This document shows, in pieces, positions 9,604-60,800 of a stretch of 64,000 bases of DNA. Location of the stretch: the NCBI GenBank assembly GCA_002269645.1, contig NIVC01002246.1, forward strand, positions 1 to 64,000, given 5' to 3'. Numbering within the stretch: the stretch's first letter is position 1; each line of letters opens with the position of its first letter. The notes under the pieces were generated by a model. That model searched no databases. It was not told where the DNA came from and saw nothing but the letters and a program-made list of their open reading frames with translations. Both the position numbers and the translations under genes were made by a program. The DNA is from Macrostomum lignano (lineage: Eukaryota).

Positions 9604-9637
<34 letters not shown>

Positions 9638-9699
9638 GGATAGATAGATAGATAGACAGATAGATAGAAAGATGGATAGATAGGTGATTAGAGAGATAA

Positions 9700-9740
<41 letters not shown>

Positions 9741-9851
9741 CAGATGGATAGAAAGATGGATAGATAGATAGATAGACAGATAGATAGATAGACAGACAGA
9801 TAGACAGATAGATAGATAGGTGATTAGATAGATAGGTGATTAGAGAGATAA

Positions 9852-9896
<45 letters not shown>

Positions 9897-16083: not shown

Positions 16084-16170
<87 letters not shown>

Positions 16171-26570: not shown

Positions 26571-26857
26571 AGGTGTCATTGCAAAGTTGAGACATGCGTC
26601 AGAAACTGACAAAAAATTCATTGCTACCGTTACTTCATAAGTTCTTTGGCGTGAGAATTTTTTTGTAAGGAATGTGTGATAAAATTCGTTTTGACACACT
26701 TTGTATTCGTGTAATATTTTTTTCTTTAAGACATAAAATTTTTGTCTACAAAATTTTAAAGCTGAATACGGCGTCAGAGTAAGTAATGCATCCCGAAACA
26801 TAAATTCATTTTTTGTTTGAATTATCCGTTTGAAGGAGAAAATATCTGTCGCGAAAA

Positions 26858-36496: not shown

Positions 36497-36649
36497 TGCC
36501 GATCGTGTTGAGATATTGGTCGCTCTCTGCAAAGTAGATTACTCTCATGTCCTGAGCCTTTCCTAATGTCTGCTGATATTTTCCAACATCAACGTGCATA
36601 ATAAATAAATCAATTGTTTGTTTGCTTTTTAACTGTGGTTAAAATTTTT

Positions 36650-37440
36650 TGACGCCAACTCTCCCAAATCTCAAAAGTTTGGCGCCAAATCATCTAAATC
36701 CCAAGAGATTATCGCCAAATCTCCCATATCCCATAGTTATGACGCCAAGTCTCCCAAATTCCAAAATCTTGGCGCCAACTCTCCCAAATCCCAAAAGTTA
36801 GGCGCCAAATCTCCCAAATGCTAAAATTTTGGCGCTAACTCTCCCAAATCTCAAAAGTTTGGCGCCAAATCATCTAAATCCCAAGAGATTATCGCCAAAT
36901 CTCCCATATCCCATAGTTATGACGCCAAGTCTCCCAAATTCCAAAATCTTGGCGCCAACTCTCCCAAATCCCAAAAGTTAGGCGCCAAATCTCCCAAATG
37001 CTAAAATTTTGGCGCTAACTCTCCCAAATCTCAAAAGTTTGGCGCCAAATCATCTAAATCCCAAGAGATTATCGCCAAATCTCCCATATCCCATAGTTAT
37101 GACGCCAAGTCTCCCAAATTCCAAAATCTTGGCGCCAACTCTCCCAAATCCCAAAAGTTTAGCGCCCAATCTCCTAAATCCTAAAAGTTTAGCGCCGAAT
37201 CTCCTAAATCCCAAAATTTTGGCGCCAAATCTCCCAAATCTTGAAAGTTTGGCGCCAAATCTCCCAGTCCTAAATGTTTGGCGCCAAGTCTCCCAAATCT
37301 CAAAAGTTTGGCGCCAAGTCTCCTCAATCCCAAAAGTTTGGCGCAAAATCTTCTAAGTCCCGAAATTTTGGCGCCAAAATCTCCCAAATCCCAAATCCAC
37401 ATACCAAATTTCGGCACAATATATTAGTCTTTTGGCGCCA
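36650..37440. repeat. 30-bp minisatellite with a 180-bp higher-order period, core ggcgccaa
   Basis: The 60-nt lines at 36661, 36841 and 37021 are identical, giving a 6x30 higher-order repeat. Confidence 0.9.
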
Positions 37441-38159: not shown

Positions 38160-38572
<413 letters not shown>

Positions 38573-39344: not shown

Positions 39345-40622
39345 ATGCGAGCCCCCGACATGCCAGCTGCAGAGGAGCAGCGGCCAGAGCTCTCCTACTC
39401 ACTGGAGGCCAGCTGCTGCGCCAGAACGAATCTGCACAGAAGGCCAAAGAAGACCAAATTGGGGTCTGCCGCTGCCGCTGCTGCTCGACGGCCCGCCACA
39501 GCCACTGCTGCTCAAACGGTCAAGCAGATGCCGAGTTCAGCAACGCAGGTGTCCAAGCCGCCTCCGAAGCAGCAGCAGCAGACGCAGCATCCGCGAGTGC
39601 TGAAACCGCGTCAGGCGCTGCTGCGACTGGAGCGTCGTCTGTCGCGCCGTCCAGATCCCGAGGCGGACGCCTTCGCCACTCCGTGGGCACTCCGGCAGCG
39701 AGCGCGAGCTCTGGACTCCCTCCTGGCGCCGTCGTCCTTCAGCGCAGCTGGGAGCCGCGCCTCATCGGCAGGCAGCTGTCAGCTGTACGGCGTCTGGGAG
39801 CGCGTGCCGATGGGGTCAGCGACGTCTGCAGCTGTCGAAGAACCGGCAACGACATCCGCAATCTCTTCGATGGCTGCCGTTTCAGTTTCAGTTGCTTCGA
39901 CAGCGACTCGGTGTCGAACTGCCGTTGCAAGAACAACGCCAGCCGCTTCTGCTGCAGTCTGTCGCAGCGTCGCTGAAGGCCCAGCGCCGGCTGCTGAAGG
40001 CAGTCGCAACCAACGCGAATGTCGGCCGGCAACAAGTTGCCATCCCAACCGCCGAGGCAGGCCGGTGATCGCTTTGGTCGACTTTGTTGCGTCCGCTGCG
40101 GTCCGAGTGAAGAACTTCAGCTTCCCTGCTGAGTCACCTCCAGCAGCTGCAACCTCTGCCTCGACGCGACCACAGGAGCAACAGCAGCAGCACCCCCTGG
40201 GATTTACTCCCAGCCTGCTGGGTAATCAGCAGGCCCTATCCGGCGCCGCGTCTTTGTCGCGGGGGGGAGGCAACGCCCGTTCTTCGGGCGGCGAAGAGCG
40301 CCGGGAATCGGTCACCGCTCCTGGCTCAGGGGCGGTGGATGTGGCTCGGTCCGGCCCTCTGTGCTCAGCCTTTGTCGCTGGCTCTGTCAGCGGTAGGGGT
40401 TTGGTACCTGGTCCGGTTATTCCGAGCTCGGTCCGCAGTCAACAACAACAACAGCAGCAGCAGACTTCGCTGCGCCCAGTACGTCGACCGGCGAGCTTCG
40501 ACCGATGCTGGGTGTCCGCGCCCGCTGCCGCCGCGGATTCTGGAGAGACGCCGTCTTCTTCAAGGTTGCCGCGCCACCAGAGACTGGCAGCGACTCTGGC
40601 GATCAACAGTTTGAAATCTTAG
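39345..40622 (+). CDS. Intronless low-complexity (Ala/Ser/Gln/Pro-rich) hypothetical protein, 425 aa
   Basis: 1278-nt ATG-to-stop ORF in a GC-rich block with a composition like the neighbouring exons. No recognisable domain. Confidence 0.55.
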   Translation: MRAPDMPAAEEQRPELSYSLEASCCARTNLHRRPKKTKLGSAAAAAARRPATATAAQTVKQMPSSATQVSKPPPKQQQQTQHPRVLKPRQALLRLERRLSRRPDPEADAFATPWALRQRARALDSLLAPSSFSAAGSRASSAGSCQLYGVWERVPMGSATSAAVEEPATTSAISSMAAVSVSVASTATRCRTAVARTTPAASAAVCRSVAEGPAPAAEGSRNQRECRPATSCHPNRRGRPVIALVDFVASAAVRVKNFSFPAESPPAAATSASTRPQEQQQQHPLGFTPSLLGNQQALSGAASLSRGGGNARSSGGEERRESVTAPGSGAVDVARSGPLCSAFVAGSVSGRGLVPGPVIPSSVRSQQQQQQQQTSLRPVRRPASFDRCWVSAPAAAADSGETPSSSRLPRHQRLAATLAINSLKS

Positions 40623-41940: not shown

Positions 41941-43228
41941 CCCGTAGGGAAGGGGGGTTGCTGCGCCGAAACAGAGCAGCGCAGTCACACAAAATTCCAG
42001 AACACGGCCTAACTTCTTGTTGTGCACCTTCTCAAGCAAGAATCAAGTCGCCAGCCCTCTGGGACTTTTTCCCTTCGTTCGTGTATTCAGTGCACCCCTG
42101 TGCGCCAATCAGCACTGCGCCTCGGTGCAGCCTTGCCAAGCCTCCAAATTTCATCAGCACGTCGACCACGTGTCTGCATCAGGTCGGACTTCGTTGTTCA
42201 ACTGGTATTTCACCCAGACGGAGCTTCTGAAGTCTGGATCTTCAACAGGTGGCACCTGGTGACTATGGACACGCTGTTGCAAACTTCTCGAGTTTCGCTG
42301 ATCAAGCCTCAACTGTTGGACATCTTCAGCCAGTCTCTCAAGCATTCAGTCGTCACTCCGACGCCGTCGGCACCTTCAACAGACGACACCAAGCGACTAT
42401 ATGGACATCCTGTTGCAACTATGTCGGATTTTTCTTATCAAGCTTCAATAATGGGCAAACCTCAACTGCTAGACATCGACAGCTAGTCTTTCAAGTATAT
42501 TTCAAGCGTATCACAAAGTGATTTGTTAGAAAAATATTAAAGCCAGAAGATAATTGAGCATATTTTTTGTTGAATGAAAATTCAATGAAATTATGTATTA
42601 AAGCCCATGCTAAATATAAAAAGTTTATTTAATTAAGGTATCACTGAGAATATTTGTACGTACATAGTTGAGAAATTTGTTGAAACGATTCAAAACAAGA
42701 AGCGCGTATGTCATACTATGCCCTTATTATAAACCTTTTTTAGAAACTAAAGAAGCAGATATAACAACTTGCATTTTTAATATATGACACAATACAATAA
42801 AAGTAAACAAAATTATGCTGCCTACCAAAGTCAGACATTTGGAATGAGAATATTTAAAATAAAATATTACTACTTATTGGATAATAAGTAAAAGTGTACC
42901 TGACGATTAGTTAGGAACATTTCCAGTTGATTATTAAAATCATTATGTGGAGATTTTAGTTTTTTTTGTATTTGTGAAATTTTAAGACAAAGTACACGTT
43001 CAACCCAGCTAATTAAGCCAATTTTTACACGCCTAATTAAAAAATTATGAAACACACAATAAAACCGATATTATTTAAGTAATTTTATTTGACGCTGAAT
43101 AAATAAATGATAAATGAGTAGTATCGATATCAAATGGGAAAGCTAGCACACTTTAAAAAAGTTGTACATGCCACACAACTGTCGCTTGAGTTTCACTTTA
43201 TTAATTAGACTAATTTAGTAATTGTGCT

Positions 43229-46200
43229 TCACTTCTTGCCCTTGAGGAAGGCTTTGCCTTCTTTAGCGGTGGCCTTCATTGTGCCGGCGCGCTTTGTGGC
43301 CGGCTTCTTGGCCACAGGGGCTGGGCGGGCCTTGCGAGTGCGCAGCTTGCGCTCGCCAGAGGTGCCCACATCCTGCAGTGGAAATTATTCTTATTTAGAA
43401 ATGGTTACTAAGCCAGGCTGTTGGCTGAAACCAGGCACTGAACTTACATGACCCAAGTAGGCCTTGGCCTCGTCAGCAACCTTCTGGACAGTGGAAGACC
43501 GCTTGATTTTGGTCTTCTTAATCACATTGGTCACTGCTCTGGTGTCGCCAAGCGTAGACTTCTCCTTGCCCAGAATTTGCTTGGCTTGCTGTTGAAATGT
43601 GCAAAAGGTTGTTGGGTCATGCCTTATTAATTATATTCATAAATGCTTACTAAGCTGTTTATATAATTATTTGTATGATGATTCTATTCCAGAAAAATGT
43701 TGCCTTAGTGTTTTAGATGCAACTCAGTACTTTCTATATTAGGGTTTTGTTTAGAATCTTTCAGGCTATTTTGCCTGCTTTGCAGACAACTGACATTTTT
43801 GCTGCTCACAAAGCATGGAGCACACTCGTGCTTTGTCCATTATTTAATTCCACAACATAGCATTTTTACCCAAGGCACCAATCAATTTAATGCACTTTTG
43901 AGCGGCCATTAGTTCACTCTTCATTTGATTTGATTGGGTAGGTGAACTGATTGGTCACTTGGGCAGAGATTATAATGTACGGTACGTTGATTCTATGTGG
44001 CAAGGCACCATTAAATTGAAAATCAGATATAAGATAATAGGCAAGTCTTTAACTCATTTATAAATTTTAATTGGATTAATAAAGCCATAGCAGTATGCCT
44101 GCTCTTATCAATTAAAAAATCTACTAGTGAAGTTGCTAAATGGTTTAATAATGGCTGGTTTAACGCGCCATTGTGTCTGGGTAAGAGGTCTTTACAATGA
44201 CTTGGGCTAATATTAGCATGCAGCAATTTAAAATTTTAATACTTAATAGGTCATAACATATTTTGACTTCAAGTTACTACAACCTACTAAATATATGCAT
44301 AGTTAAATGTATGACTAATTGCAATTTGTCAATAAAAGAGATATAACAATAAATAGAAAATAAACAAATCTAGAAAATAAAAAATGCAATACTTCCTTTT
44401 TAACTGTTTATTATTTGCAACTAGCACCAGTGCAAGTTGTCAGTAGTAGCAACTCAGTTAATACTATTTTAGTTGTTAGCAATAGCTACTATATGTAGCA
44501 TGCAACAATGTAGTGAGGTAGAAATTTTTAGCCACAATAGTATAACCACACAAATAGGCATGTTGCCTTCCCATTCTCTAGATATTCTGTTTACCTAAGT
44601 GTATTGCCTTATCTCCCATTTAAAAATTCTTTCTACCTAGACATTTTACTTATGCCCCAGGCATTTTTGCTATCCCTTACTAAGATTCCTTTGACTATTA
44701 GACATTCTGCCTTCTTACTCAATTCCCTATTAGGTGTCTTACTCTCCTTGCTAGCATTCTCCATTAGATAAAAACTTTAGGATAGTGCACTTCTTTTCTA
44801 GGCAACTATGGTTTATCACATAGCCTATTTTCTTCCTCTCTTCCCTAAACTGAATGTAACTGAGTTAAACAATGTCTTGCCACTTGGACACTAAAGCTAC
44901 TAGAATATTAATTGAACTTACTCTTTATAGTAAATATATACAAGAAATTTTCTATTTTAAACTCCTCCAAGAAATCCCATAATTCCCCATAACAATTGTG
45001 GGATTTATAAGTCATAAACTCTCCCTAGAGCCACACTCTAGATCATGTAGTATATGCCCAAAAATTTGGGGATGCATTGTCCTTGCATGCCAAAAGTAGG
45101 CATGCACAGTTAGCATGCATCACTCCTAAGAAAATAGTATGCCTGCACACCTGGTGTGCACTTTAAAGAATCATGCAAAAGAGTTAGTATTAAGAAGAAA
45201 ATATAAGAAACGTTCATTTTTAAGTGTAAATTTCAAGCTTTCTAGGTTTCAAAGCTTATAATAAGGCATTTAAACAAATCTTTGCATATAACAATTTCTG
45301 GTATAAATAGTATTGCTAAAAAGCATAAAAATCAACCAAGTTATCTGCCAAAAAGGTTGTCTTACATAATTCAAAAAGGTCATCTATTTTCACAACATAA
45401 AAAGGTCATTTATTGTTGCAACATTGGCATAATTTTGGGAATGGGCATGCACTTAATTTTTTGGCATGCATTGGTAATTATTTAATTTTTGTTCATGCAT
45501 GCACCCAGCATGATTTGGACTATGGCTATGCCAATTTTTTAAAGAATTTTTTTTAATAAATATAATAGTTTTTATTAAACTCTTAAATGCCTGTTCTTTG
45601 CTAAAAACTAAAATTCTTTGTTTTAATTTTATTTTTCTCATTGTGTGAATATTTTTGCAAATATAATTTTTGTTTAAATCTACACATAAATTTAGTAGAA
45701 ATAGAATCAATTTTCAGCGGAGGAAAGACCAACCTTGTGCACTGCAGTTTAGTAAGGAAGTTTGTAGCAAATAAGAGTTCTAAGCAAATATATATAAAGC
45801 AGTTTTCCCAAGTTGATTTATTTTCTCAAGTAAAGTGAAAAAATTGGAAGCATACACAATATATACTACTGAGAAGTGGAGGTGCTAAGTAGAAATCAGT
45901 ATCTCAGTAACGCCTAGAACTGGAAATATATTAACATAAAGTATATATTGCATATAACAGTAGACTATATACACCACTTAGGCTAGAATAATAGTAAACA
46001 TTACTAGAATAATAGTAAAATGCTATTAGAATAACAGTAGAATGCGACTTGTAAGGATTAGGCTCTAACTAATATTCAAAACAATTCTTAAACTAATACT
46101 TAGACCTATGCTTAGATAAATATTCAGATAAATACTTAGACCCCAGGATGGAATTTTTGTACAAAATCTTGGATGCATTCTGTATGCGCTAACAAAAACT

Positions 46201-49200
46201 TGCGCACTTGCATGCATATTTCTAGCAAACTTGCGCAACTTTAAAAAGCTTACATGTGTGCAGCTTAATATTCTAAAAAATCTTGCATAATTTCATTTAA
46301 ATTTTGAATATTGCACTTGTTACAGTAAAACAAAGTTATTACAAATTAAAAAACAAAGCTACTAGAAACTACATTAAACTAAAAAAGAATAATATTATAT
46401 ATTATTAAAGATTTATTTAAACTTTAATAGGACATTGTAAAAAAGTTGCTAAGAAATTCAAGAAGCAAAAAATTGTGCATTCAGCAGGTAAAACACTTGC
46501 GCAAAGAAATTGCGTGCAACTTTTTGTTCCAAACTTGTCATGCAAAGATTCCATCCTGGCTTAGAACTATACTAAAAACTTTTCTCATAATTATTTTAGG
46601 AATAGGATAATAAATTTATAATAGAATAGTCTTGGTGGCAGCTTTTTAGGATATTTAGGCCTATAGGGTGAGAAGTAGCACTCCTAGTGCAACTTTGGTA
46701 GCATTGGTACAATTTCTAAAAGAGGTTAATATTTTCTATTTTAGTTTTTAATTATTTTCAAAGAGATTTTGTTGGTTGATATTAAATACAGGGGCCTTTT
46801 CATATTACCAATTCCAGAACCAGAATTGGTTCGGAATTCCAAGAAAAACAGCAGTATAACTATTAAACTCTATTAATATTTGACTGCTTTAACAGCCTCA
46901 CTTTGCACAATTTTTTCACTTTCTTCTTGGCAATTGTCATTCAATAATAAAAACTTTATAGCAGGTATCTCGCTCTAGTTATGGAGACAAAAAGTTTTAC
47001 TTCACAAATTGGTTCTGGTTCTGGAACCAGAACAAGCAATAAGAAAAGGCCCAAGATTAAATTAGCCCTGAACTTGGCTATTTTATTGTATGCCAACTGT
47101 TTATACTTTATATTGAAATGACCCACATTGGAATTCCAACTCCAACTCCAAATTCATGAAAAGATAAAAAAAAATTCAAATCCTACAAAAGCTAACTGTA
47201 TGTCTAAATCTGTGATAATCAGATGATAAAAAACAACTGTTTTCTACATTTTTGTAACTTTTCAGTCATATTCATTCATTCATCTTGTTGCTATTGATCT
47301 TCAGTTTAAAATAGATGATATAAATTTAATAATTTCTGTATATTTATAGACTCTATTAAAATGTTTGAAGACCTGGCCTGCACTCAAAACTGAAAACTAA
47401 TTTAGAGTTAAAGTGAAAATAAAAAATAACAAAAGAAATTTACATTTATTTGCAATTTCTGCAAGATTCATGTATCCAACTTGGAGTTATTGACCTCTAG
47501 TTTGAAATGAACATTTAAATGCATACATTTAGTACATTTTCAATATGAAACCAAGTTTAAAAATCTAGTCTGCACTCAAAACTGAAAACTAATTTGGAGT
47601 TGAAGTGAAAATCAAAAATAACAAAAGAAATCTACATTTCTGTGCAATTTCTGCAAGATTCATGCATCCAACTAGGAGTTATTGACCTCTAGTTTGAAAT
47701 GAATGTTTAAATGCATAAATTTTAGTGCATTAACAGTATGAAACTAAAAGTTTGAAAATCTGGTCTGCACTTACAACTGAAAACTAATTTGGAGTTAAAG
47801 TGAAAATTAAAAATAATAAAATAAATCTACAAATAGTTTTCTACAGATTTGTGCGTCTTCTCCACAATGAATGAAAGTGGCAGGAATATGAAATTGAAGT
47901 CTCCAGTTACAGACTTAATTCTCTAGAGTATTCTAAGTATTGGGAGAAAATACTTCCATACAACCTTGACCATTACATTGTGCAGTCAGATATACATTTT
48001 TAAAAGTCACTGTTTGTACAGTGTGTGGGTTTCTAATTTCCCACATTACTGACATCCACTGTAATTTGGTTTCTACTAAAGTTTACCACAAGCCCACTTT
48101 CACGAACTTTATGCTTAATTTTGGAGCTGTGTGTCCCAGACAGTGGAAAGTTGGCCTTGATTCGTTGTTTGTTGCACAGGGCCTACATGGTTTGCAGCTC
48201 CTGGACCAATCTCAACATTGAAGTTAACAATCTCACCAAAATTCTGAGAATGAATCAATTTCCCAAGAATGTCATTTGCAGTGAAATCAATAGATTTATC
48301 TCTAATAAAATGACAAACAAACTGAGTTTTGCTTCTGATAAGGATGTGTTAAAAACTTGCCTGACCATGGTCTTGCCTTTCTATGGCAACTGCTCTAACC
48401 TGTTGAAGAAGAAAATTGAGAAAAGCTTCCGTAAATTCTTTAACACACCTATTAAGATTGTTTTCCGCACTGCTAAGGTCAGCCAATATGTTAGTAGACT
48501 GAAATCCCATGTTCCTCTTGCTCTGGCAGCAGGTGTTGTGTATAAGTTCTCTTGTTCTGTTGACCAGAACATTACCTATATAGGTAAAACTAAAAGGCAC
48601 CTGTACACCAGAGTCAGAGAGCATTGGTTAAAAAGGTCGGCTATCCAAGACCAAGACCACCTGCTCTGTTGCAACAGTTGTTGCAAAATTGAGCAAACTC
48701 AGCAGTTTAAAATTATTGATCAGTGTAGAACTGATTTTAGGCTCAACATACTTGAATCCATGTACATTAAAGACCAAAAAACCTAATCTGAATATTCAAC
48801 TCTCCCATAGTGGTGCAGGCCATTTGCTCAAGGTTTTCTAAGTAAAGGCACTAGTCTGAACAATGTACTTGCAATCTATGCTTAACATTTTTTGGAAAAT
48901 TCTGCCCATGACATGCCCTTTGGACTGTACAGTTAACATTTGTTCACTTATAAAGTTGTTGTGTGAGTTAAAAATACACCAGACCCTGAAGATGGTCATT
49001 GTTGGACCGAAACACATTGGAAGAAAGAATTTATTATAATCTATGTTGATTTTAACTTTTGTAGTCATCAAATTGTGTTAAAAGTTAATATGAATTAAAT
49101 ACTATTTGAACAAATTGCAGGACTAGTTACAGCAAGTCTTGCTGCAAAACCCACCATGATTTGCATGTAGCTGGAGAAGTAGTTCCAGTTGTTGGGGGAA

Positions 49201-52200
49201 AATCTGCCACAAACTCAGAACAATAAACAATGCAAAAAATTGAATGCGGATTTAAACTGCCACCCTTTAGTTTAAAGCTTCTATGTCACAATGCCAGAAA
49301 AGCCTTAGAATTGCTGCAACATCTGCAAAGATGCCAATGGTTGCACAAATGACACAATTGATGATTCAAAGGGTAGCAAAGGCAGCGCAGATGACACTGG
49401 CATTGATCATAGTGAAATCAGCACCAATAGCAGCAAAGGCAATGCAGATGGCACTGCCAATGGTAGCAAGGGCTGCGGAGATCGCACAGAGACAGAGGCT
49501 AATGAAAGTAGCACAGATGACACTCAGGCAAGTGAAAGCAACACAAAAATGACAAAAATCCATTGCCATCAAAAACTGGCAATCAAGTTTTTAACAAAAA
49601 CTTCTCCATGTAGATTTGTCTCTTTTTAATGCTAAAAACTTCAAACAAGTCAGAACAAAAAATCGGCACAGGCAGAATTGCATGTTAGTGGGTTCGGATC
49701 ATTTATCAGTGCTACAATTTGGAGAACGTGTACTACTTGCCCTTTTGAACTACAAGGAAGCCTTTGATAGTGCTACTTTAGAGAAGACCCTAAAAGGGTA
49801 CATTCAAACAGTGACTGCTTGTCTGTTTCAATTCACAATGTTTTGTGAGGAGCAACTCAGAACTCTGCTCAAGTGCATGGGAAAAAGTCATGTGCTGCAT
49901 TTTGATGCCACCAATGGTATTGTAAAAAAAGTGCACTACATAAAAGGCCAGCCATTTTTCTACTCATTGACGCTTGAGTCTGCACGAATCACTTGCAGTC
50001 AACATTGCTAATGCTGTCCTAACGTCACATAACAGGGGGGGCCATAGCCCAGCAGTAGCGCAGCTGCTCTGGTGTGCCAGCGACCCAGGCTCGATTCCAA
50101 GTGCAGCCACATTAATTTGGGGCTGAATTGGAATTTAGGCTTGGCTCGCTTGTGCAATTAACGGCCTTGAGAACCAACCCCCCAAGGCGCATTGAAGTGT
50201 ACATGCCTAACAATTGATAAAAGTTAGGGCCGCTGTACACTCCTGTGTAAGTGTGTGCCTGTGTAACGTATCCGCGCGCTTGTATGCCTGCTCAGGGGAG
50301 TCGGCGGAATGGGCAGTAATGCCTCTCGCCGGTTGTGTGCCAATGTCGCCTAAAGTGCGCCAGGGTGCACACAACCCCCCTGCCTCTAATTAAAAAAAAT
50401 GTCACATAACACAGAAAATGTGCACAATTTCTTGTTGCAAGTTTTCTATGCTATAAACAGGCTCCATGCTTGATCAATTCCCCATATTGGGATTGTCCTT
50501 ACTGATTTTTCCTGGGCACTTATTTTTGCTGTTTGTGGTAGCTTTTGCCAAATGGACATTAGTGATTTACTTCAGCATTATTTTGAACATTTTGAAAACT
50601 TGGGCAATTCTGTCAAGTCAATGCCTTTCTTGTGTACGAATCATGTCATTGCAACAGTATGTTAAACATTAAAAAAGCTAAAATTTGCAAGCATCGATAC
50701 TTGAATGAGACATTTTTTCATCTGTGTTTTAGTACTGTTAATATACAGCAAGTCATATACTGCTATTGTAAGCTCAGCTGAACTAGCTGTTAAACTATTT
50801 AGTTTACAATGTTCAGTCCCACATGTGCTGAGATTGCCAGCTGAATGAGTTGCTCTCTGGCAAACAATTGATGTTCCAGAAGACTCTAATCCAAGGGATG
50901 CCAACAAGGTGTCTAGCAAGTTTTGTTCAAGGAAACTGTAATTAATGCTTCTAGCATTCATAAAAAATTGCCATTTTTGCCAAGTTTGTTGGCAGGGTTT
51001 GCCAAGATGCCACGGATGGCCCAATCACGAATCTGCAGTATTCTAAAATGTTGACTGCGCTCCTTGTTGATAAGTGGCTTCCTCTAGCTCCTATTTGAGG
51101 TCATTTTGTGATTGAGAACCAAAGCCATTTTGAGTTAAGGAAATCATGGTATTCAAATGTGACAGCTGAAAATTACTTTGGGAGTATTAAGTATGATGTG
51201 CTACATGGCAGGAAAGGACTTTGTGCACCAGACTTCGTGATTGCATTTTTAGAGTGGACTAGACAACATCTAGAAATTAACAAATTCACTGCGCAATTGG
51301 GTGAGCTCATCTATTTGAAAGTGTGGTAAAAATTATGTGCAGGCTTCAGTATAGCTAAGTCTATAATACATAAGAAACAAATCTTTAATTTCCTTTAGAA
51401 TTATCATATTTAAATATTTAAATATGACCCTATATTTAAAATTGATTCCATGTAGGTAAAGTGTGACCTTTGTGACATGTGGTACCACGCTTTCTGCATC
51501 GGCTTGTCCCCTCGACAGTTTGATGCAGTGAAGAAGTTGAACTGCTTCTTTGTGTGCAATATCTGCCTGTTTCTCTATAGGCACGAGTGCAAAGAGTAAT
51601 GGTTTGGACTAAGAATTTTGAATTATGATTATTTTGTGATGATGTTTGCTAAACTTTTCAATGATGTGATTTTTTGAGCTTGTGATGGTTGTTGCTAAAC
51701 TTTTCGATGATATGATTTTTCGAGCTTATGACTTTTCGAGCTTGTGATGGTGGCTGCTAAATCAGTTTTTGACAATGTGATTTTTTGAGCTTGTGATGGT
51801 GGTTGCTAAACTTTTTGACAATATGATTTTTTGAGCTTATGATGGCGACCCCAGAAAACAACTACTAAATTTGCACTATGAATTAGCATTTGTACCTCAG
51901 CAAATCTAAAAGTACATGCATTTAAAAACACAAACGACCATCTGTCGCATTTTTGGATTCTCCTGGTATCGTGTCGCGCAACAGTGGTGTCAAGTGGTGT
52001 GTCGCATCGCGTGACACTGGAAACCTGGTGTCATCATGCGTCGCGTCGCGGCCTGGACCTGTAGCCAAAACCTTGCAAACTGTGCTTCATTGTAATATGT
52101 TCACGGTTGTTTCTTGGTATTTAAATGTTTCAAACATGTTTGATAATAACTAGTTCTTGAATTGTTCTTTTTTTTTCTGATGGTAAAGTAACTAATACTT

Positions 52201-54691
52201 CAAATATAATTTTTTGAAATTTACTTTTTAGTTACAATGTGTGCGCTGTTTTTCTAAGTGTTGTACCTTTGTTGTTTTACTGTTTATTGTTTTTAAATTT
52301 CTTTTTGTTTTCCGCAAAATTGAAAAGAATACTCTCGTCCCTCGCCCTATGGTCTCGGTGTCGGGAGTAAATGGCAGAACAGGAATTGTCAATTGCAATG
52401 TGGCTGCTGTGGCGTCCTCCCCCCTAGTCATTCGGTCAACAGACATCAGTATTGCGTCGCGCGTCGCCGCCCCCTAGTCAACAAAATTTGGTGTCACGTT
52501 GCACTTTTGAGGGCACAATTTTGGCACCCATTTCGCACATCTGCGGGTTTTTGAAACTTATTCCAATAGGGATTTAAAAAACATCCATTTCAAACTAGAG
52601 GTCAATAACTCCTAGATAGATGCATTAATCTTGCAGAAATTGCACAGAAATGTAGATTTCTTTTGTTATTTTTGATTTTCACTTCAACTCCAAATTAGTT
52701 TTCAGTTTTGAATGCAAACTAGATTTTTAAACTTTTTCTTTCATATGTAACAGGGGGATTCTTCCTTCTTAATAATATCCCACTGCTGTTACCAAAAGCT
52801 GTCCCAGGGCTCTTAATTATTCTCTTTCTAGTCTTACTTGCTGCCACCAAGTTGTCAAAGTGCTAAACTAATCTTTTAAGTTGGTAGCCGCCACCAGGAT
52901 TATCCTATTAATAAATTATGAGTTTATCAATCTTAGAATAATCAGAGAATTGTTTCTTGGAATTGATCTGAGTATATATCTTAGTATTTAGTCTGAGTAT
53001 TTTAGTCTGAGTATTTAGTCTAAGTACATGTATTTAGTCTGAGTATTATTCTTGGAAACTATTAGCCCTTAAAGATTTTATTCCTCTTATTCTGGTAGCG
53101 TTTATTCTGATTCCGGTAGCGTTTACTGCACTTTTGGCCTGAGTGGTCTATTGGCTATACTGGTATATGTATTCTATGTACTTTGCAAGTCCTTGGGCGT
53201 TACCGAGATCAGAGGGTCACAGCCTCCGTTATTCTTACACGTATTATATCAGATCTACTTTGCAACTTCTTACTACTCAACACTTTCCTTCTCAGTAGTA
53301 TATACAGTACACAATTCTGTCTACTTCACTCTTACTTCTTAAAAGGAATTAACACAGAAAACACTTCTTCAATTCTTATTTTCTCGGAGCTCTTACTATT
53401 AGCTATCAACTATTTTATTATTGAACCGCAATGCGCGAGGTTGGTCTCTCCTCTGCCAAAAATGCTTCTATTTATACTAAAATTTGCTACAGTTTTAAAC
53501 AAAAATTTGTTAGTGCAAAATATTATAGAAAATATGAGTATTAAAACAAAATGTTTCTTAGTTTTGGCGTGAATTCAAATTGACTAAACGGTGAATATTT
53601 TATAAAGAAATTGGGAGGGGCCCTGCATACATACTAAAAATGCACTAAAATTTATGCATTTAAACATTCATTTCAAACTAGAGGTCAATAACTCCAAGTT
53701 GGATGCATGAATCTTGCAGAAATTGCAAATAAATGTAAATTTCTTTTGTTATTTTTTATTTTCACTTTAACTCTAAATTAGTTTTCAGTTTTGAGTGCAG
53801 GCTAGGTCTTTAAACATTTTAATAGAGTCTATAAATGTAAAGAAATTGTTGAATTTATACAATCTATTTTAAACTAAAGATCAATAACAACAAAATGGAT
53901 GAATGAATTGGACTAAAAAGTCACAAAAATATAGAAAACAGTTGTTTTTTTTTATCATCTGATTATCACAGATTTAGACATACGGTTTGCTTTTGTAGGA
54001 TCTGAAAATTAGTTTTTGTTTTCAAAAATTTGGAGTTGGAGTTGGAGTTTGAATGCGGGCCATATATTGAACCTAAAAATTCTATATGCTAAGTATATGC
54101 CAAGATTGTTAGCAAGAGCAAAAATATGCCAGAATTTTCTAGCATATAGGTCACCTTCTGGACTATGGATGCTAATGATAGGAGGGCCTAGGCTTACAAT
54201 ACAAACAATCTTTTTAGGCCTACAATTCAATTCTTTTTAATGATCATTGATATGTCCTATGCAAATAGAGAACATAATATAATATAAATAAACTAATGAA
54301 ATTTATAATATACTAATAAAGGTGGCCTGTATGTCAAAGTTTTCTAGCATGCATGCATTTGCTATTGCCTCAGCTTAGCTTACTTTGCCTGGCCCTGGTG
54401 TAGGCCCATAGATAAAGTAGGCCTAGCACCTAGGCCTATAAAATTAAAAAGCTGCTTTTTTGACAAAAAATTTCCTATAGCTATGTAACACGGTTTTTTC
54501 TGTGTGCCTAGGCCTAGAGTAATATATATTTATGTGATTGGCATTGGCATCAATGTTTCCCCATGTCTATAATTATATGGCCACACCATGTTGCACCAAG
54601 CCCAACTCATGTATTGATTTGAAAACACACCCACCTTAGCTGTCGCAGCCATAGTTGAATCTCGTGCGATTGATGGTTTGCTGTCGGCCAT
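43229..54691 (-). CDS. Unrecognised 113-aa basic protein with three RxxT-helix repeats, 3 coding exons
   Basis: Exons 54691-54635 (MADSKPSIARDSTMAATAK), 43588-43448 and 43372-43229, all phase-0 GT-AG. Joining exon 1 to exon 2 completes the same motif that is seen twice downstream. Confidence 0.75.
46143..46559. mobile_element. hAT-like MITE
   Basis: TIR ccaggatggaat / attccatcctgg; 8-bp TSD cttagacc / cttagaac (7/8). Confidence 0.7.
46792..47052. mobile_element. PIF/Harbinger-like MITE
   Basis: TIR gggccttttcatatt / aataagaaaaggccc with subterminal ccagaaccagaa inverted motifs; flanks cag/aag are an imperfect 3-bp TSD. Confidence 0.55.
48021..49070 (+). mobile_element. 5'-truncated Penelope-like retroelement (RT thumb + GIY-YIG endonuclease)
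   Basis: STKVYHKPTFT..LIRCLLHRAY..N.FP; GVVYKFSCS..TYIGKTKRHLYTRVREH; LNILESMYIK. Frameshifts at about 48160 and 48780. Confidence 0.9.
48975..49025 (+). ncRNA. Hammerhead ribozyme-like motif in the Penelope 3' region (probably degenerate)
   Basis: CTGAAGA (48986-48992), stem II ggtc/gacc, GAAAC (49009-49013). Stems I and III are weak. Confidence 0.5.
49283..51600 (+). pseudogene. Disrupted NOF-like MULE DDE transposase
   Basis: GYIQTV..FQF.MFCEEQ, LHFDATNGIV (D1), TDFSWALI (D2), NVTAENYFGSIK (E). Stops, frameshifts and a SINE insertion. Confidence 0.78.
50035..50400 (+). mobile_element. tRNA-derived SINE, copy 2
   Basis: A-box-like tagcccagcagtag, B-box-like ggctcgattcc, tail ctctaattaaaaaaaa; exact 11-bp TSD gtcacataaca at 50024-50034 and 50401-50411. 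Confidence 0.88.
52746..53631 (-). mobile_element. Solo-LTR-like insertion in the right arm of Foldback element 2
   Basis: 886-bp block with TGT..ACA termini (tgtatgcaggg ... ccctgttaca on the minus strand) interrupting the arm unit at tttcata|ctg. The duplication is only ta or cata, so the TSD is ambiguous. Confidence 0.6.
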
Positions 54692-55599
54692 TTTATAACT
54701 TTTACTGAAGATAGACTTAAAATTTTTAACTAAGAATAAGATATAAAATAAGCCACACGATACTTGTTTGATCGGATGGATCGTGGTCGTCGCGAGGCGC
54801 GATCGCGAACGTTAAAGAATGATAATTCGGAATTTTGTAATGTAATTTTAGAGTGAAATAATTTCTTTTACACGATTAAAATTTCATATAGTAAAAAAAT
54901 AAGAAAACATAATGTTGATACTTATACCTATTTGTGCATAAACATATAAAATAAATAAAAAGTTTTGTTTTACATACGTATATTTCAATATTAGTATTCT
55001 TGAAACTGCACAAATTGAAGTCGAGTCGGCATGATGCGCAATTGCAAGTGCAATTATTACTAAACTCGTTTCTCAAGAAGCTGCAATAAACTAATCAAGT
55101 GAACTATACGTTTACTATAATACCCTCTAATTTCATTTTCCATGGAAAAGAAAGTCCCGATATGGTGCATTTATCAATTGCCGAGGCAATTCCGAGGCTA
55201 CAGTAGTTACATTTTAACCTATACATGTAAAACAATGATGCGCTAGGAAAGGAACTAAGCAAAAGTTTTTTACACAGTGTCAGTAATCTGGCAGTGACAT
55301 CTATTTAGTCAACCCGGATCGTTAGACTGGTGACTGGACAAATTATTCCAACCAGCAGCAATTTGGATCAACAATTATACTAGCTGTACGTATGTGGCAT
55401 CTGCACCACTCTGGTCACCACAGGCTTAACAGCTGGGCCCCCACATCCTACGTACTATACTAAAAATTCCAAACTAAATCCAAAAAAGCCCCTAGCATGG
55501 TTGTCCTGCTGGCTCAGATCAGGCGCGGTGTGGGCAACCACCGGAGGCCGATCACTGGCCCCTGCTATACAAGCTGCTATACAAGTTATGCTGCTCTGT

Positions 55600-57883: not shown

Positions 57884-60800
57884 TCAATTATAGTCTTCAT
57901 CTTCGGAGCTGCTGGTCAGTAACTCGACCACAGCTCGTCTGCGCAGTGCGCTCGATTGTTGCTGCTCCTGGGCCCGGCGGGAGGCCTTCTTCTGTTGCTC
58001 CTCCCAGTGCCGTTGAGCCGCCTCCTGCCATTCGCGCTCTCTGAATGCGTCCTGCGATGGCGGGTCAGCGATCGGGTTGGGGATTAGCAGAGGGTGTCTG
58101 TTGGATGAGGCTGGGTTGGGGATTAGCAGAGGGTGTCTTTTGGATGAGGCTGGGTTGGGGTAGCAGAGGGTGTCTGTTGGATGAGGCTGGGTTGGGGATT
58201 AGCAGAGGGTGTCTGTTGGATGAGGCTGGGGTTAGGTGTAGCAGAGGGTGTCTGTTGGATGAGGCTGGGGTTAGGTGTAGCAGAGGGTGTCTGTTGGATG
58301 AGACTGGGGGTAGCAGAGGGTGTCTGTTGGATGAGGCTGGGGTTGGGGGTAGCAGAGGGGTCTATTGGATGAGGCTGGGGTTGGAGGTAGCAGAGGGTGT
58401 CTGTTGGATGAGGCTGGGGTTGGGTGCAGCAGAGGGTGTCTGTTGGATGAGGCTGGGGTTATGGACAGCAGAGGACATCGGACAGCAGTCCAGAACCTAG
58501 TTACAACCATAGTTACCTCCTCTTTCCTCCTGTGCACCAGGAACGCCACCTGAGACAGCAGGGTGTCCATTTTGGCTTCATCTTTAGCATCTTCGGCAGC
58601 TTGCAGGGTGAGCGACCGGTTCATTGGGAAGAAGTCCAGACGGTCTTTTTTGTACTGTTTGATAAAGGTGGACATTTAATTAAATGGGAAGAAGAATGAA
58701 GACAAAAACAAAGCCTATATTAATGTCTGTTCAACAGTGGGTTTTCAGATCTTTACTGTATTGATTAGCCATATATACATGTACTCGTAGTTCAAAAGGG
58801 GGTACTGATATCTTAGGCTATGGATAACTGGCTTTCACGAGTAACATAGGTTGTACAAGGTCAAAATCTACTTTTTTTCCAATTTTTACTGACTTTTTGA
58901 AGCCTCCCCAAGGGGGGCGAAATTGCTAGTCCTATATACTAAAAATGAGTCAGTTACAATAGACACGGCTCTACTCACGAGCTTCCACACGTACAGCTCG
59001 ATAGCTGTGTAGTCATTAAACCGAGTCTCGTTCAGGTGCAAAAAGAAAAACAAATAAGCCCACTGATTGTGCTCTTCCACAATGTGCTTCTTGAATCCCT
59101 GCAGAGACGTTTTGAGAGGTTTTTGTGCGATTGTATAAATCAACTTCAATCAATAAGTCGAGTTTATCCAGCACCGCTCCAATAAACAGAGTTATTGAAC
59201 AGAGTTATTATAAACACCCCAATCTCAACCCGGATTTTCCCAAGAGTCACTCCAATCACCCTGAAGTTTCCCGAGAGAGTCACTCCAATCACCCTGAAGT
59301 TTCCCGAGAGTCACTCCAATCACCCTGAAGTTTCCCGAGAGAGTCACTCCAATCACCCTGAAGTTTCCCACGAGAGTCACTCCAATCACCCTGAAGTTTC
59401 CCGAGAGAGTCACTCCAATCACCCTGAAGTTTCCCCAAAAGTCACTCCAATCACCCTGAAGTTTCCCACGAGAGTCACTCCAATCACCCTGAAGTTTCCT
59501 GAGAGAGTCACTCCAATCACCCTGAAGTTTCCCAAGAGTCAACCCAATCACCTTGACTCTCACCCCATTCACCCCAGTTGGGGTGAATTGGAGATTCACC
59601 CCAAATACCATGAAGCTTCCCAAGAGAGTCACTCTAATCACCCTGAAGTTGAGATTCACTCCAATTAACATGAAGTTGAGATTCACTCCAACTACCATGA
59701 AGATGAGATTCACTCCAATCACCCTGAAGTTTGCCAGTTAGAGTCACTCCCAATCACTCTGAAGTTTGTTAGGAGTCACTCCAATCACCCTAAAATTTGC
59801 CAAGAGTCACTCCAATCAGCGTGAAGTTTCCCCAAAAGTCACCCCAATCACCCTGAAGTTTCCCCAAAAGTCACTCCAATCACCCTGAAGTTTCCCAAAA
59901 AGTTACTCCAATCACCCTGAAGTTTCCCCAAAAGTCACTCCAATCACCCTGAAGTTTCCCCAAAATTCACTCCAATCACCCTGAAGTTTCCCCAAAAGTC
60001 ACTCCAATCAGTCTGAAGTTTGTTAAGAGTCACTCCAATCACCCTGAAGATTCCCCAAAAATCACTCCAATCACCCTGAAGTTTCCCCAAAAGTCACTCC
60101 AATCACCCTGAAGTTTCCCCAAAAGTCACTCTAATCACCCTGAAGTTTCCCCAAAAGTCACTCCAATCACCCTGAAGTTTCCCCAAAAGTCACTCCAATC
60201 ACCCTGAAGTTTCCCCAAAAGTCACTCCAATCACCCTGAAGTTTCCCCAAAAGTCACTCCAATCACCCTGAAGTTTCCCCAAAAGTCACTCCAATCACCC
60301 TGAAGATTCCCAGGAGTTACGTTGCTCCAGCGTCACTCCAATCTCAGAATGAGAAATTGTAAGTGTGGGCCTCTGTACATTGGACGTATACGATCAGTAT
60401 GTACTGTACATCCGTAAATGCTATAAAAAACTCACCCCGCCATAGTGCTCAAAATCGTAAGAATTCTTCGAGCAGATGAAGCACACTGAGCTCATGTCTT
60501 TGTCGATCCGCCATTTGGCATCTCGCAATTCGCTGAAAGTGTCCACAATAATGCCGAAGACGATGTTCAGCCCAATTGTGGTGATGATGATGAAAAATGA
60601 AATATCGAACGCAGTTTTAGCCAGATGGTAGTTGAAGCTGCGGTTTCTGGGCACGTCGAAGTACTGAAGTTTTTGCAAGGGTTCGTCGCCGGTAATTACT
60701 GACAGCTTATATACTATATAGCTACGAAGTATATAATGGCTTTTCAATGCCATTGAAAATCTTCAGATAGCAAAATTGAAATTTAGCTCAAAACACTTCT

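What the first reader, a model, noticed from the sequence alone, without database searches (positions are those of the whole stretch)
43229..54691. Hidden 113-aa basic protein made of three RxxT-helix repeats, split by an 11-kb TE-filled intron
Seen: the ORF track misses this gene. Two small exons (43588-43448, 43372-43229) lack a start, and a 57-nt ATG exon 11 kb upstream (54691-54635, AAG|gtgggt) joins in phase and completes a third copy of the motif. The repeats are IARDSTMAATAKQAKQIL, IKRSSTVQKVADEAKAYL and TKRAGTMKATAKEGKAFL, separated by K/R-rich linkers. A candidate 5'-UTR intron (about 54706-54762) and a CpG-rich patch lie just upstream. Established: [I/L]xRxx[S/T] is the CaMKII/PKD phosphorylation consensus. 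Inference: a small, highly basic, disordered protein with three phospho-switchable amphipathic helices that could bind nucleic acid, chromatin or cytoskeleton. I do not recognise the family.
Basis: partly seen in the sequence, partly recalled or inferred. Interest (0 to 1): 0.78.

Follow-up and report, generated by a model that had tools for sequence, protein, structure and literature searches.

The report
Conserved small basic repeat-protein gene
This is a real three-exon flatworm (Macrostomum lignano) gene for a 113-residue, very basic, mostly disordered protein from an old, unnamed and unstudied animal protein family, and transposon insertions have swollen its first intron to 11 kb.

Summary
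Exons 54691-54635, 43588-43448 and 43372-43229 (minus strand) join in phase through GT..AG sites into a 113-aa ORF. The window is Macrostomum lignano contig NIVC01002246.1. The full protein differs by one residue from UniProt A0A1I8G187, predicted from another genomic copy.

Support for the junction:
- A paralogue has the same 3-exon structure.
- An intron-less contig from a related species reads across the junction.
- dN/dS is 0.07-0.14.
- Coral, sea-star and nemertean orthologues have a 57-nt first coding exon ending T-A-K, then a phase-0 intron.

Intron 1 is about 2 kb in another copy. Here it holds a 6.9-kb inverted-repeat element with an 8-bp target duplication, plus a Penelope-like fragment.

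The three repeats are real (25-37 bits against a motif model from other phyla; best shuffle 8). They define an unnamed family found from sponges to echinoderms, with no Pfam, PDB or fold match. UniProt's "H15 domain" label is not supported.

Function is untested. The best guess is a nuclear, chromatin-binding disordered protein. The phospho-switch idea is plausible but unproven.

The parts
54635..54691 (-). Coding exon 1 (57 nt, 19 codons, MADSKPSIARDSTMAATAK). It ends in phase 0 inside repeat 1, before donor GTGGGT.
   Evidence: The same 57-nt first coding exon occurs in coral, sea star and nemertean.
54692..54704 (-). Short 5' leader (TAAAAGTTATAAA) between the upstream AG and the ATG.
54705..54763 (-). 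Candidate 5'-UTR intron. Alternatively it is the end of an outron: acceptor CTTCAG at 54710-54705, weak donor GTATCG at 54763-54758.
   Evidence: The acceptor fits the M. lignano trans-splice motif [T/C]TNCAG (PMC8629364). Unresolved.
54760..54830 (-). CpG-rich patch: 11 CpG in 71 nt, o/e 2.8. Possibly a core promoter.
   Evidence: Conserved in copy L006.
43589..54634 (-). Intron 1, 11,046 nt, phase 0, at an ancient position. It is about 2.0 kb in copy L006.
47118..54063 (.). 6,946-bp inserted element with terminal inverted repeats (47118-47547 vs 54063-53630, about 90% identical). The L006 copy lacks it. No transposase was recognised.
47110..47117 (.). Left 8-bp target-site duplication, ATATTGAA.
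   Evidence: A single copy sits at the L006 empty site.
54064..54071 (.). Right 8-bp target-site duplication, ATATTGAA.
48121..48786 (+). ORF fragment with a GIY-YIG endonuclease domain. It looks like the 3' part of a Penelope-like retroelement, nested in the TIR element.
   Evidence: PF01541 E=2e-4, 21.9 bits, just under the gathering score of 22.6. Translation.
47378..47831 (.). 192-bp subterminal tandem repeat of the inserted element.
43448..43588 (-). Coding exon 2 (141 nt): end of repeat 1, motif B (LGDTRAVT), basic linker, repeat 2.
43373..43447 (-). Intron 2 (75 nt, GTAAGT..CAG).
43229..43372 (-). Coding exon 3 (144 nt including stop TGA at 43231-43229): Arg-rich motif, Pro/Lys linker, repeat 3.
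43568..43588 (-). Second half of repeat 1 (QAKQILG). The first half is 54679-54635 (KPSIARDSTMAATAK).
   Evidence: 30.9 bits.
43529..43552 (-). Motif B, LGDTRAVT. Arg36 is invariant in the family alignment.
43451..43516 (-). Repeat 2, KTKIKRSSTVQKVADEAKAYLG (degenerate copy).
   Evidence: 24.9 bits.
43322..43357 (-). Arg-rich motif GERKLRTRKARP. Its family counterpart is EGR[RK][TL]R[SK][QR]..P.
43241..43306 (-). Repeat 3, KPATKRAGTMKATAKEGKAFLK (canonical copy).
   Evidence: 37.2 bits.
43197..43202 (-). AATAAA polyadenylation signal, 27 nt after the stop codon.

Best explanation
SHOWN:
- A functional-looking three-exon gene on the minus strand of M. lignano contig NIVC01002246.1 encodes a 12-kDa, pI 10.8, Cys/Trp-free protein.
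- It is the compact flatworm version of an ancient, unnamed metazoan family. The family is built from a 21-residue helical motif (motif A: K-P-x-L-[KA]-[RK]-x-x-T-M-x-x-T-A-K-E-G-K-x-hydrophobic-L). Motif A alternates with a G-D-T-R-x-x-T / R-x-x-R-rich motif and with Lys/Pro-rich linkers.
- In coral, sea star and nemertean, each motif A is split by a phase-0 intron right after T-A-K, so the family grew by exon duplication. The flatworm keeps only the first of these introns.
- That intron is about 2 kb in one genomic copy. In this copy it has grown to 11 kb through insertion of a 6.9-kb TIR element carrying a Penelope-like fragment, plus other repeats. This is why the transcript-based GenBank model here starts inside exon 2.

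INFERRED (about 0.35-0.4):
- The protein is nuclear and binds chromatin multivalently.
- The basic linkers and the Arg-rich GERKLRTRKARP segment would contact DNA and possibly the nucleosome acidic patch.
- The three short, Thr-capped amphipathic helices would form on binding a partner.
- Phosphorylation of the invariant Thr, in a hydrophobic-x-[RK]-x-x-T-M context, would tune helix formation or binding.
For: Gene:
- Exact in-phase exons and canonical splice sites.
- One-residue difference from UniProt A0A1I8G187.
- Paralogue with identical exon phases.
- Intron-less homologous contig reading across the junction.
- dN/dS of 0.07 (dS 1.45) and 0.135.
- Conservation confined to ATG..GT in exon 1.
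- AATAAA 27 nt after the stop.
- The Mlig_3_7 models are RNA-seq derived (PMC5730564), so exons 2-3 at this locus and the whole paralogue have transcript support.

Family:
- An exhaustive HMMER search found 61 cluster representatives at E<=1e-3, the best non-flatworm hit at 1.9e-23 over the full length.
- Named hits come from sponges, corals, echinoderms, a hemichordate, molluscs, an annelid, a nemertean, a brachiopod, rotifers, a tardigrade, horseshoe crabs, cestodes, a trematode and a monogenean.
- Motif consensus from 188 units. Three significant copies in the window protein.
- Shared intron position.

Intron growth.

Chromatin inference:
- Net charge +21 and K/R/P/A-rich linkers.
- Orthologues in horseshoe crabs, a brachiopod and cestodes replace the third motif A by AT-hook-type sequences (RRGRPRK, GRGRPKK, GRPPKK). 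These include one weak Pfam AT_hook hit.
- Many orthologues carry acidic tails, as HMG proteins do.
- hhalign places GERKLRTRKA on the HMGN2 core QRRSARLSAK, though not significantly.
- Arg-anchor motifs of this type bind the acidic patch in HMGN and Dsup, and phosphorylation weakens that binding (PMC12487698).
- The C-terminus of the acidic subfamily resembles the NLS-bearing C-terminus of parathymosin: score 30.9 against at most 18.7 in 200 shuffles.

Disorder with helices.
Against: - No RNA read for the 54635/43588 junction of this copy was available. The GenBank model at this locus is 5'-partial, so this copy might be mis-spliced or start inside the intron.
- No localisation, binding or phosphorylation data exist for any family member.
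- The window protein itself has no AT-hook and no acidic tail.
- The HMGN similarity is not significant (probability 0.5%).
- The AlphaFold models have low confidence.
Confidence: 0.45

Rival explanations
1. It is a linker-histone (H1/H5-type) protein, as UniProt's automatic name 'H15 domain-containing protein' for both M. lignano paralogues implies.
For: The UniProt/UniRef names for A0A1I8G187 and for the Mlig027316 product. The composition is Lys/Ala/Pro-rich. The first, shallow model has three helices within residues 14-64.
Against: No Pfam Linker_histone hit for the protein or for any of 24 family members, even at E<=10. hhalign of the family profile against human H1.0 gives probability 0.07%. 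No PDB sequence hit to any H1 or H5. AlphaFold gives isolated helices, pTM 0.23, no beta-hairpin wing and no compact domain. Foldseek finds nothing. The family's repeat and intron logic is unlike H1.
Confidence: 0.04
2. It is a non-nuclear, phospho-regulated disordered adaptor. The repeated hydrophobic-x-[RK]-x-x-T-M helices would be docking or substrate sites for a basophilic kinase, calmodulin, a phosphatase or a cytoskeletal partner. Basic charge would then be incidental.
For: The conserved hydrophobic(-5)/[RK](-3)/T(0)/M(+1) pattern matches CAMK-group and PKD consensus sites (established knowledge; consensus). The motifs are amphipathic helices. No DNA-binding domain is detectable.
Against: AT-hook-type motifs and NLS-like basic clusters in orthologues point to the nucleus. 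Thr is chosen over Ser in 96% of units, and a second Thr at +7 is 95% conserved. Both are unusual for a mere kinase site.
Confidence: 0.2
3. It is an RNA-binding, nucleolar or ribosome-associated small basic protein.
For: Extreme basicity and disorder. Automatic 'nucleolin-like' names on several orthologues.
Against: The 'nucleolin-like' names come from composition, since no RRM or GAR domain is found. All the Foldseek matches have E>2 on a low-confidence model. No Rfam or snoRNA link exists at the locus.
Confidence: 0.12
4. This particular copy is a decaying duplicate. The 11-kb TE-laden intron prevents proper joining of exon 1, so only 5'-truncated, non-productive transcripts are made. The 2-kb-intron copy and the paralogue supply the protein. 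This is compatible with the family assignment above.
For: The GenBank transcript-based model at this exact locus is 5'-partial and starts 18 nt inside exon 2. The intron is about 8-10 times the mean M. lignano intron length of 1.1-1.4 kb. The genome is a neopolyploid with redundant copies.
Against: All three exons, all splice sites, the ATG and the upstream region are intact. They differ from the L006 copy by only 1 synonymous and 1 non-synonymous change. The L006 model in GenBank is also 5'-partial despite its short intron, so partiality looks like an annotation artefact. An 11-kb intron is not by itself a barrier to splicing.
Confidence: 0.15

Closest known systems
HMGN proteins and the HMGN-like motif of tardigrade Dsup (nucleosome acidic-patch binders)
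   Same: Both are small, intrinsically disordered, very basic proteins. Both have an Arg-rich segment followed by a Pro/Lys-rich stretch: family EGRRTRSQSKPAPPKP and window GERKLRTRKARPAPVAKKP, against HMGN2 RRSARLSAKPAPPKP. Ser/Thr residues lie inside or beside the motif. Many orthologues have acidic tails.
   Different: The similarity is not statistically significant (hhalign probability 0.5%). There is no Pfam HMG14_17 hit. The Arg spacing differs (RR-T-R or R-K-L-R against RR-SA-R). The family's defining helical T-M-x-x-T-A-K-E-G repeat has no HMGN counterpart. HMGN is vertebrate-only, whereas this family's named hits are all invertebrates.
Linker histone H1/H5 (H15 domain), the automatic UniProt label
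   Same: Lys/Ala/Pro-rich, basic, presumably nuclear.
   Different: No winged-helix globular domain shows up by Pfam, hhalign, PDB sequence search, AlphaFold or Foldseek.
HMGA / AT-hook proteins
   Same: Horseshoe-crab, brachiopod and cestode orthologues end in RGRP-type AT-hook sequences exactly where other members have the third motif A. One weak Pfam AT_hook hit was found.
   Different: The window protein has no R-G-R-P core. The AT-hook is an accessory of some lineages and not the family's defining feature.
Parathymosin / prothymosin alpha (acidic nuclear disordered proteins)
   Same: The acidic echinoderm, hemichordate and cnidarian subfamily ends ..LKR-x(14)-KRQKT-x-NG. This aligns with parathymosin's C-terminus ..ALKR..KRQKTENG, which from my own recollection carries the nuclear localisation signal. 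hhalign probability is 52-55%, and the score is well above 200 shuffles.
   Different: Parathymosin lacks the T-M-x-x-T core. Prothymosin alpha gives no signal. There is no Pfam Prothymosin hit. The flatworm protein is basic, not acidic.

Membership tests
Unnamed metazoan 'T-M-x-x-T-A-K-E-G repeat' family (no Pfam entry) | Two or more copies of motif A, K-P-x-L-[KA]-[RK]-x-x-T-M-x-x-T-A-K-E-G-K-x-hydrophobic-L | tested here: met
   Three copies at 30.9, 24.9 and 37.2 bits against an HMM built from 179 units of other phyla. The maximum over 2000 shuffles is 8.2 bits.
Unnamed metazoan 'T-M-x-x-T-A-K-E-G repeat' family (no Pfam entry) | Collinear full-length homology of the core module (A, G-D-T-R, linker, A, Arg-rich, Pro/Lys, A) | tested here: met
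   Full-length hits at E=1.9e-23 to 1e-15 to mollusc, annelid and other proteins. T17 and R36 are invariant in the 24-sequence alignment A3.
Unnamed metazoan 'T-M-x-x-T-A-K-E-G repeat' family (no Pfam entry) | Phase-0 intron inside motif A directly after T-A-K, with a 57-nt first coding exon | tested here: met
   The window's exon 1 is 57 nt and ends ..TAK|GT. The same holds in Pocillopora, Patiria and Tubulanus. The later motif-A introns are lost in the flatworm.
Linker histone H1/H5 (H15) | Winged-helix globular domain (Pfam PF00538 / PROSITE PS51504) | tested here: not met
   No Pfam hit at E<=10. hhalign against H1.0 gives probability 0.07%. No PDB hit. AlphaFold gives pTM 0.23 and no beta wing. 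PROSITE itself could not be run.
HMGN | Invariant RRSARLSA nucleosome-binding core (Pfam PF01101) | tested here: not met
   The window has GERKLRTRKARP. hhalign aligns it to the HMGN2 core at probability 0.5%. No Pfam hit.
HMGN | Binding to the nucleosome acidic patch through Arg anchors | not testable with these tools
   This needs nucleosome binding assays or cryo-EM. The mechanism is described in PMC12487698.
HMGA / AT-hook | R-G-R-P core flanked by basic residues | tested here: not met
   Absent from the window protein. Present only in some orthologues.
   No Pfam family at E<=10.
LEM / HeH helix-extension-helix domains | About 40-residue two-helix domain matching Pfam LEM or the emerin LEM sequence | tested here: not met
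   hhalign against emerin gives probability 0.1%. No Pfam LEM or SAP hit. No Foldseek hit.
Class II (TIR) DNA transposon, for the 47118-54063 insert | Terminal inverted repeats, target-site duplication and an empty site in a homologous copy | tested here: met
   TIRs of about 434 bp at about 90% identity. 8-bp TSD ATATTGAA, and a single ATATTGAA in L006. The right flank diverges after the TSD, so the empty site is clean on one side only.
Class II (TIR) DNA transposon, for the 47118-54063 insert | Transposase ORF | tested here: not met
   No transposase domain in any ORF of 70 aa or more. The element is probably non-autonomous or decayed.
Penelope-like retroelement (fragment 48121-48786) | GIY-YIG endonuclease downstream of a reverse transcriptase | tested here: inconclusive
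   GIY-YIG at E=2e-4, 21.9 bits, against a gathering score of 22.6. No RT domain is present.

The most novel reading that the evidence does not exclude
The gene represents a pan-metazoan family of multivalent chromatin-binding disordered proteins that has not been recognised as a family. The family predates the cnidarian-bilaterian split, grew by exon duplication, and is missing from named vertebrate, insect and nematode hits. In this reading its members combine Thr-capped, phospho-tunable helices with an HMGN/Dsup-like arginine-anchor motif. That would make it part of the 'untapped realm' of acidic-patch binders proposed in PMC12487698. It might also be the invertebrate stock from which the parathymosin C-terminus derives.
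Probability: 0.2. Interest if true: 0.7.

Novelty: new variant of a known kind. Interest (0 to 1): 0.45.

Why it matters
For genome annotation, the finding repairs a 5'-partial GenBank model (Mlig008810.g1). It also shows how a TE-inflated first intron hides a 57-nt ATG exon in a model flatworm that supports transgenesis and RNAi.

For biology, the protein is the minimal, 113-residue version of an ancient animal family. That family has no Pfam entry, no solved structure and no studied member, yet it is under strong purifying selection. Its repeat and intron architecture has been kept from corals to sea stars.

If the chromatin-binding inference is right, invertebrates would have a counterpart to the vertebrate-only HMGN-type architectural proteins, in an organism where it can be tested directly. 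If the inference is wrong, this is still a clean example of a conserved short helical motif with two invariant threonines whose partner is unknown.

Tried and rejected
- Pfam on the protein, on 10 full-length homologues and on all 24 members of alignment A3: nothing relevant.
- PDB sequence search with the protein and with a profile: nothing.
- Two AlphaFold2 models (4 and 24 sequences) and Foldseek against PDB: low confidence and no match.
- H1.0, HMGN2 and emerin-LEM comparisons by hhalign: none significant.
- Prothymosin alpha: no signal. Parathymosin: borderline, kept only as a lead.
- Text and supplement searches for Mlig008810, Mlig027316 and A0A1I8G187 in M. lignano papers: no occurrence.
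- Alignment of the 5' leader with the related-species contig, to test the 5'-UTR intron: too diverged to decide.
- Rfam on the whole window, looking for an intron-hosted RNA: no hit.
- SL-donated ATG joined to exon 2. I considered this because the M. lignano spliced leader ends in ATG and exon 2 starts in phase 0. Exon 2's acceptor CAACAG does not fit the [T/C]TNCAG trans-splice motif, so I rank it unlikely. It was not tested.
- Sperm nuclear basic protein: rejected as the main reading, because the family is slow-evolving and many orthologues are acidic.

Full report
**Source and locus.** Homology searches identify the window as Macrostomum lignano. Window 33229-53570 is 100% identical to GenBank contig NIVC01002246.1 of assembly GCA_002269645.1, Mlig_3_7. 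GenBank annotates this locus as 'BOX15_Mlig008810g1, partial'.

**The observation.** 54691-54635 is 57 nt, runs from the ATG to AAG, and has donor GTGGGT. 43588-43448 is 141 nt, after acceptor TTCAACAG, with donor GTAAGT. 43372-43229 is 144 nt, after CACTGCAG, and ends in TGA. Together they give a 342-nt ORF of 113 codons. An AATAAA follows the stop by 27 nt. Exon 1 is the only match to the N-terminal 19 residues in the window (E=3e-7).

**Independent support for the distant exon.**
- UniProt A0A1I8G187 (113 aa), predicted from another genomic copy, is identical apart from T52A.
- That other copy (L006, NIVC01000522.1) has the same three exons, but intron 1 is only about 2.0 kb.
- Paralogue Mlig027316 (112 aa, 75% identical, four near-identical loci) has exons of 54/141/144 nt in the same phases, within 1.2 kb.
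- In an alignment with the paralogue, conservation starts at the ATG and stops at the GT donor.
- A 1258-nt Logan contig (run SRR24204641) encodes an 82%-identical 114-aa protein with no introns and reads straight across the junction. I do not know whether that run is an RNA or a DNA library.
- dN/dS is 0.07 against that contig (dS 1.45) and 0.135 against the paralogue.
- The coral Pocillopora, the sea star Patiria and the nemertean Tubulanus all have a first coding exon of exactly 57 nt ending ..T-M-x-x-T-A-K, followed by a phase-0 GT intron.

The Mlig_3_7 gene models are derived from RNA-seq assemblies (PMC5730564). So exons 2-3 here and the complete paralogue have transcript support. I could not reach reads for the junction of this specific copy.

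**The intron.** Intron 1 is 11,046 nt, against a reported mean of 1.1-1.4 kb for the species.
- Comparison with L006 shows collinear remnants of a roughly 2-kb ancestral intron at window 43589-44259, 46728-46792, 47052-47117 and 54260-54634.
- Homology to L006 stops at 47117. There a 6,946-bp element begins, running 47118-54063. It has terminal inverted repeats of about 434 bp at about 90% identity, 47 of 60 identical bases at the tips, a 192-bp subterminal tandem repeat, and an 8-bp target-site duplication ATATTGAA on both sides. L006 has a single ATATTGAA.
- The sequence to the right of that site differs between the copies, so the empty site is clean on one side only.
- Inside the element, ORF 48121-48786 carries a marginal GIY-YIG domain (E=2e-4). 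It looks like the 3' end of a Penelope-like element. No transposase was found.
- Other dispersed repeats lie at 45041-45630 and 50036-50398.
- A third copy (L007) shares parts of the insert, lacks 45932-50534, and has its own 5.8-kb insertion.

'TE-filled intron' is therefore correct, and the intron differs greatly among the copies of this neopolyploid genome.

**Upstream features.** The CpG patch is real but small: 11 CpG in 71 nt, o/e 2.8, against 0.34 in the intron and 0.68 across the window. The proposed 5'-UTR intron (54763-54705) has a poor donor, CAA|GTATCG, whereas the species' motif is GT[G/A]AG. Its acceptor CTTCAG matches the published SL trans-splice acceptor motif [T/C]TNCAG. Roughly 30-39% of M. 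lignano genes are trans-spliced. An outron is therefore at least as likely as a cis intron. The related-species leader is too diverged to decide.

**The protein and its family.** The product is 12.1 kDa with pI 10.8. It has 22 Lys and 8 Arg against 9 acidic residues, and no Cys or Trp. Pfam, PDB sequence search and Foldseek find nothing.

An exhaustive HMMER search of 1.84 billion representatives found 61 clusters at E<=1e-3. The best non-flatworm hits, at 1.9e-23 and below, align over the full length. Named members come from sponges, corals and anemones, echinoderms, a hemichordate, molluscs, an annelid, a nemertean, a brachiopod, rotifers, a tardigrade, horseshoe crabs, cestodes, a trematode and a monogenean. 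Their names are only compositional guesses such as 'nucleolin-like', 'caldesmon-like' or 'CHZ1-like'. No named hit is from a vertebrate, insect or nematode.

From 188 units the repeat consensus is K-P-x-L-K-R-D-G-T-M-x-x-T-A-K-E-G-K-x-F-L. Thr is 96% at the first Thr position (Ser 4%), Met 86%, the second Thr 95%, Glu 85% and Leu 79%. Motif A is usually followed by G-D-T-R-x-x-T or A-K-T-R-G-Q-Q-K. An Arg-rich E-G-R-[RK]-[TL]-R-[SK]-[QR]..P-P-x-K-P segment precedes the last motif A.

The window protein is the bare core module: A1-B-linker-A2-Arg-rich-linker-A3. Each of its three A copies scores 25-37 bits against a model built only from other phyla, where the shuffle maximum is 8.2 bits.

In coral, sea star and nemertean, every motif A is interrupted at the same point by a phase-0 intron. 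The repeats therefore arose by exon duplication, and the flatworm's 11-kb intron sits at the oldest of these positions. The glass-sponge gene is intron-less.

**Structure.** With 4 or 24 aligned sequences, AlphaFold2 gives pLDDT 61-67 and pTM 0.36-0.23. Helices lie on the three A motifs (13-26, 49-64, 98-110) and on motif B (35-43), with no tertiary packing. This fits a disordered chain with short, Thr-capped helices that are moderately amphipathic (hydrophobic moment 0.23-0.80).

**What it is not.**
- UniProt's automatic 'H15 domain-containing protein' label is not supported. There is no Linker_histone hit at E<=10 in any of 24 members. hhalign against H1.0 gives 0.07%. No winged-helix fold is predicted.
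- No LEA, LEM, SAP or HMG14_17 hit was found.

**Likely function (inference).** Five observations point to a nuclear, chromatin-associated role.
- The protein has extreme basicity and Lys/Pro/Ala linkers.
- Horseshoe-crab, brachiopod and cestode orthologues carry AT-hook-type sequences (RRGRPRK, GRGRPKK, GRPPKK) exactly where others have the third motif A.
- Many orthologues have acidic tails.
- The Arg-rich segment is what hhalign places on the HMGN2 RRSARLSA core, though without significance. Such Arg-anchor motifs bind the nucleosome acidic patch in HMGN and Dsup and are weakened by phosphorylation (PMC12487698).
- The C-terminus of the acidic subfamily resembles parathymosin's C-terminal ALKR..KRQKTENG segment, which I recall as bearing the nuclear localisation signal. 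The score is 30.9 against at most 18.7 in 200 shuffles.

The hydrophobic-x-[RK]-x-x-T-M context fits basophilic CAMK-group and PKD sites (established knowledge). The second Thr, in T-A-K-E, fits a CK2-type S/T-x-x-E site. Both are untested. The near-exclusive use of Thr suggests helix capping or a pThr-specific reader in addition.

I put about 0.9 on the gene and family statements, and 0.35-0.4 on chromatin binding. The phospho-switch idea I can only call plausible but unproven.

**Novelty and score.** The sequence is already catalogued, in full in UniProt and as a partial model in GenBank, so the gene is not new as an object. New here are three things:
- The GenBank model at this locus is repaired.
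- The H15 label is shown to be unsupported.
- An unnamed, ancient, intron-phased repeat family with no characterised member is recognised.

This is of moderate interest. It is useful for flatworm annotation and is a testable lead for invertebrate chromatin biology, but it is not a surprising mechanism on present evidence.

Noticed in passing
window 43229-43570 and 33229-53570: The window is GenBank contig NIVC01002246.1 (Mlig_3_7). The deposited model for this gene (Mlig008810.g1) is 5'-partial and starts 18 nt inside exon 2. The sister copy's model (g2, on NIVC01000522.1) is also partial, although its intron is only 2 kb.
   Followed up: yes
L009, L010, L011 (Patiria, Tubulanus, Pocillopora orthologues): Every motif A of the orthologues is split by a phase-0 intron right after T-A-[KQAE]. 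All three have a 57-nt first coding exon. This is a textbook exon-duplication repeat architecture conserved since before the cnidarian-bilaterian split. The glass-sponge gene (L012) is intron-less.
   Followed up: partly
proteins P0034, P0036, P0043, P0051, P0057, P0062, P0099, P0103: In horseshoe crabs, a brachiopod and cestodes, the third motif A is replaced by an AT-hook-like RGRP / GRPPKK sequence.
   Followed up: partly
alignment A4 (acidic echinoderm/cnidarian subfamily), C-terminus: The C-terminal ..LKR..KRQKTxNG segment resembles the C-terminus of human parathymosin. hhalign probability is about 53%, with a score well above shuffles. Prothymosin alpha shows no such similarity.
   Followed up: partly
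window 27248-30832 (+): An intact-looking 1194-aa ORF of a non-LTR retrotransposon, with an AP-endonuclease domain and a reverse transcriptase (RVT_1 E=1.5e-30).
   Followed up: no
window 11378-13953 (-): LTR-retrotransposon pol fragments: RNase H, integrase zinc-binding domain and integrase core.
   Followed up: no
window 5636-7429 (-): A 597-aa ORF with a Tudor domain (E=1.7e-12). It partly overlaps a 24-nt minisatellite at 7396-7938.
   Followed up: no
window 34896-35468 (+) and 35425-37395: A Ras/Rab-type small GTPase exon (Ras E=3e-33), annotated as a 227-aa gene in GenBank. It is directly followed by two long minisatellites: 21 nt x 38 copies and 30 nt x 25 copies.
   Followed up: no
window 23335-23729 and 25766-26601: Two arrays of the same 187-bp repeat in opposite orientation flank a 401-aa ORF (23940-25145, minus strand) that has no Pfam match. 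This is possibly another TIR-type element with tandem-repeat ends.
   Followed up: no
window 2056-3865: A G-rich 23-nt minisatellite with 82 copies gives an extreme GC skew of 0.74. The window holds many further minisatellites and simple repeats: (GATA)n at 9387-9955, (CT)n at 15722-16199, (GA)n at 38162-38568, 32-nt repeats at 59235-60311, and 20-nt repeats at 61908-63193.
   Followed up: no
window 39345-40622 (+): A 425-aa ATG ORF, annotated as a gene in GenBank, with no Pfam domain. It lies 2.6 kb downstream of the studied gene on the opposite strand.
   Followed up: no
window 43589-54634: CpG is strongly depleted in the intron (o/e 0.34), compared with the whole window (0.68) and the promoter patch (2.8).
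   Followed up: no
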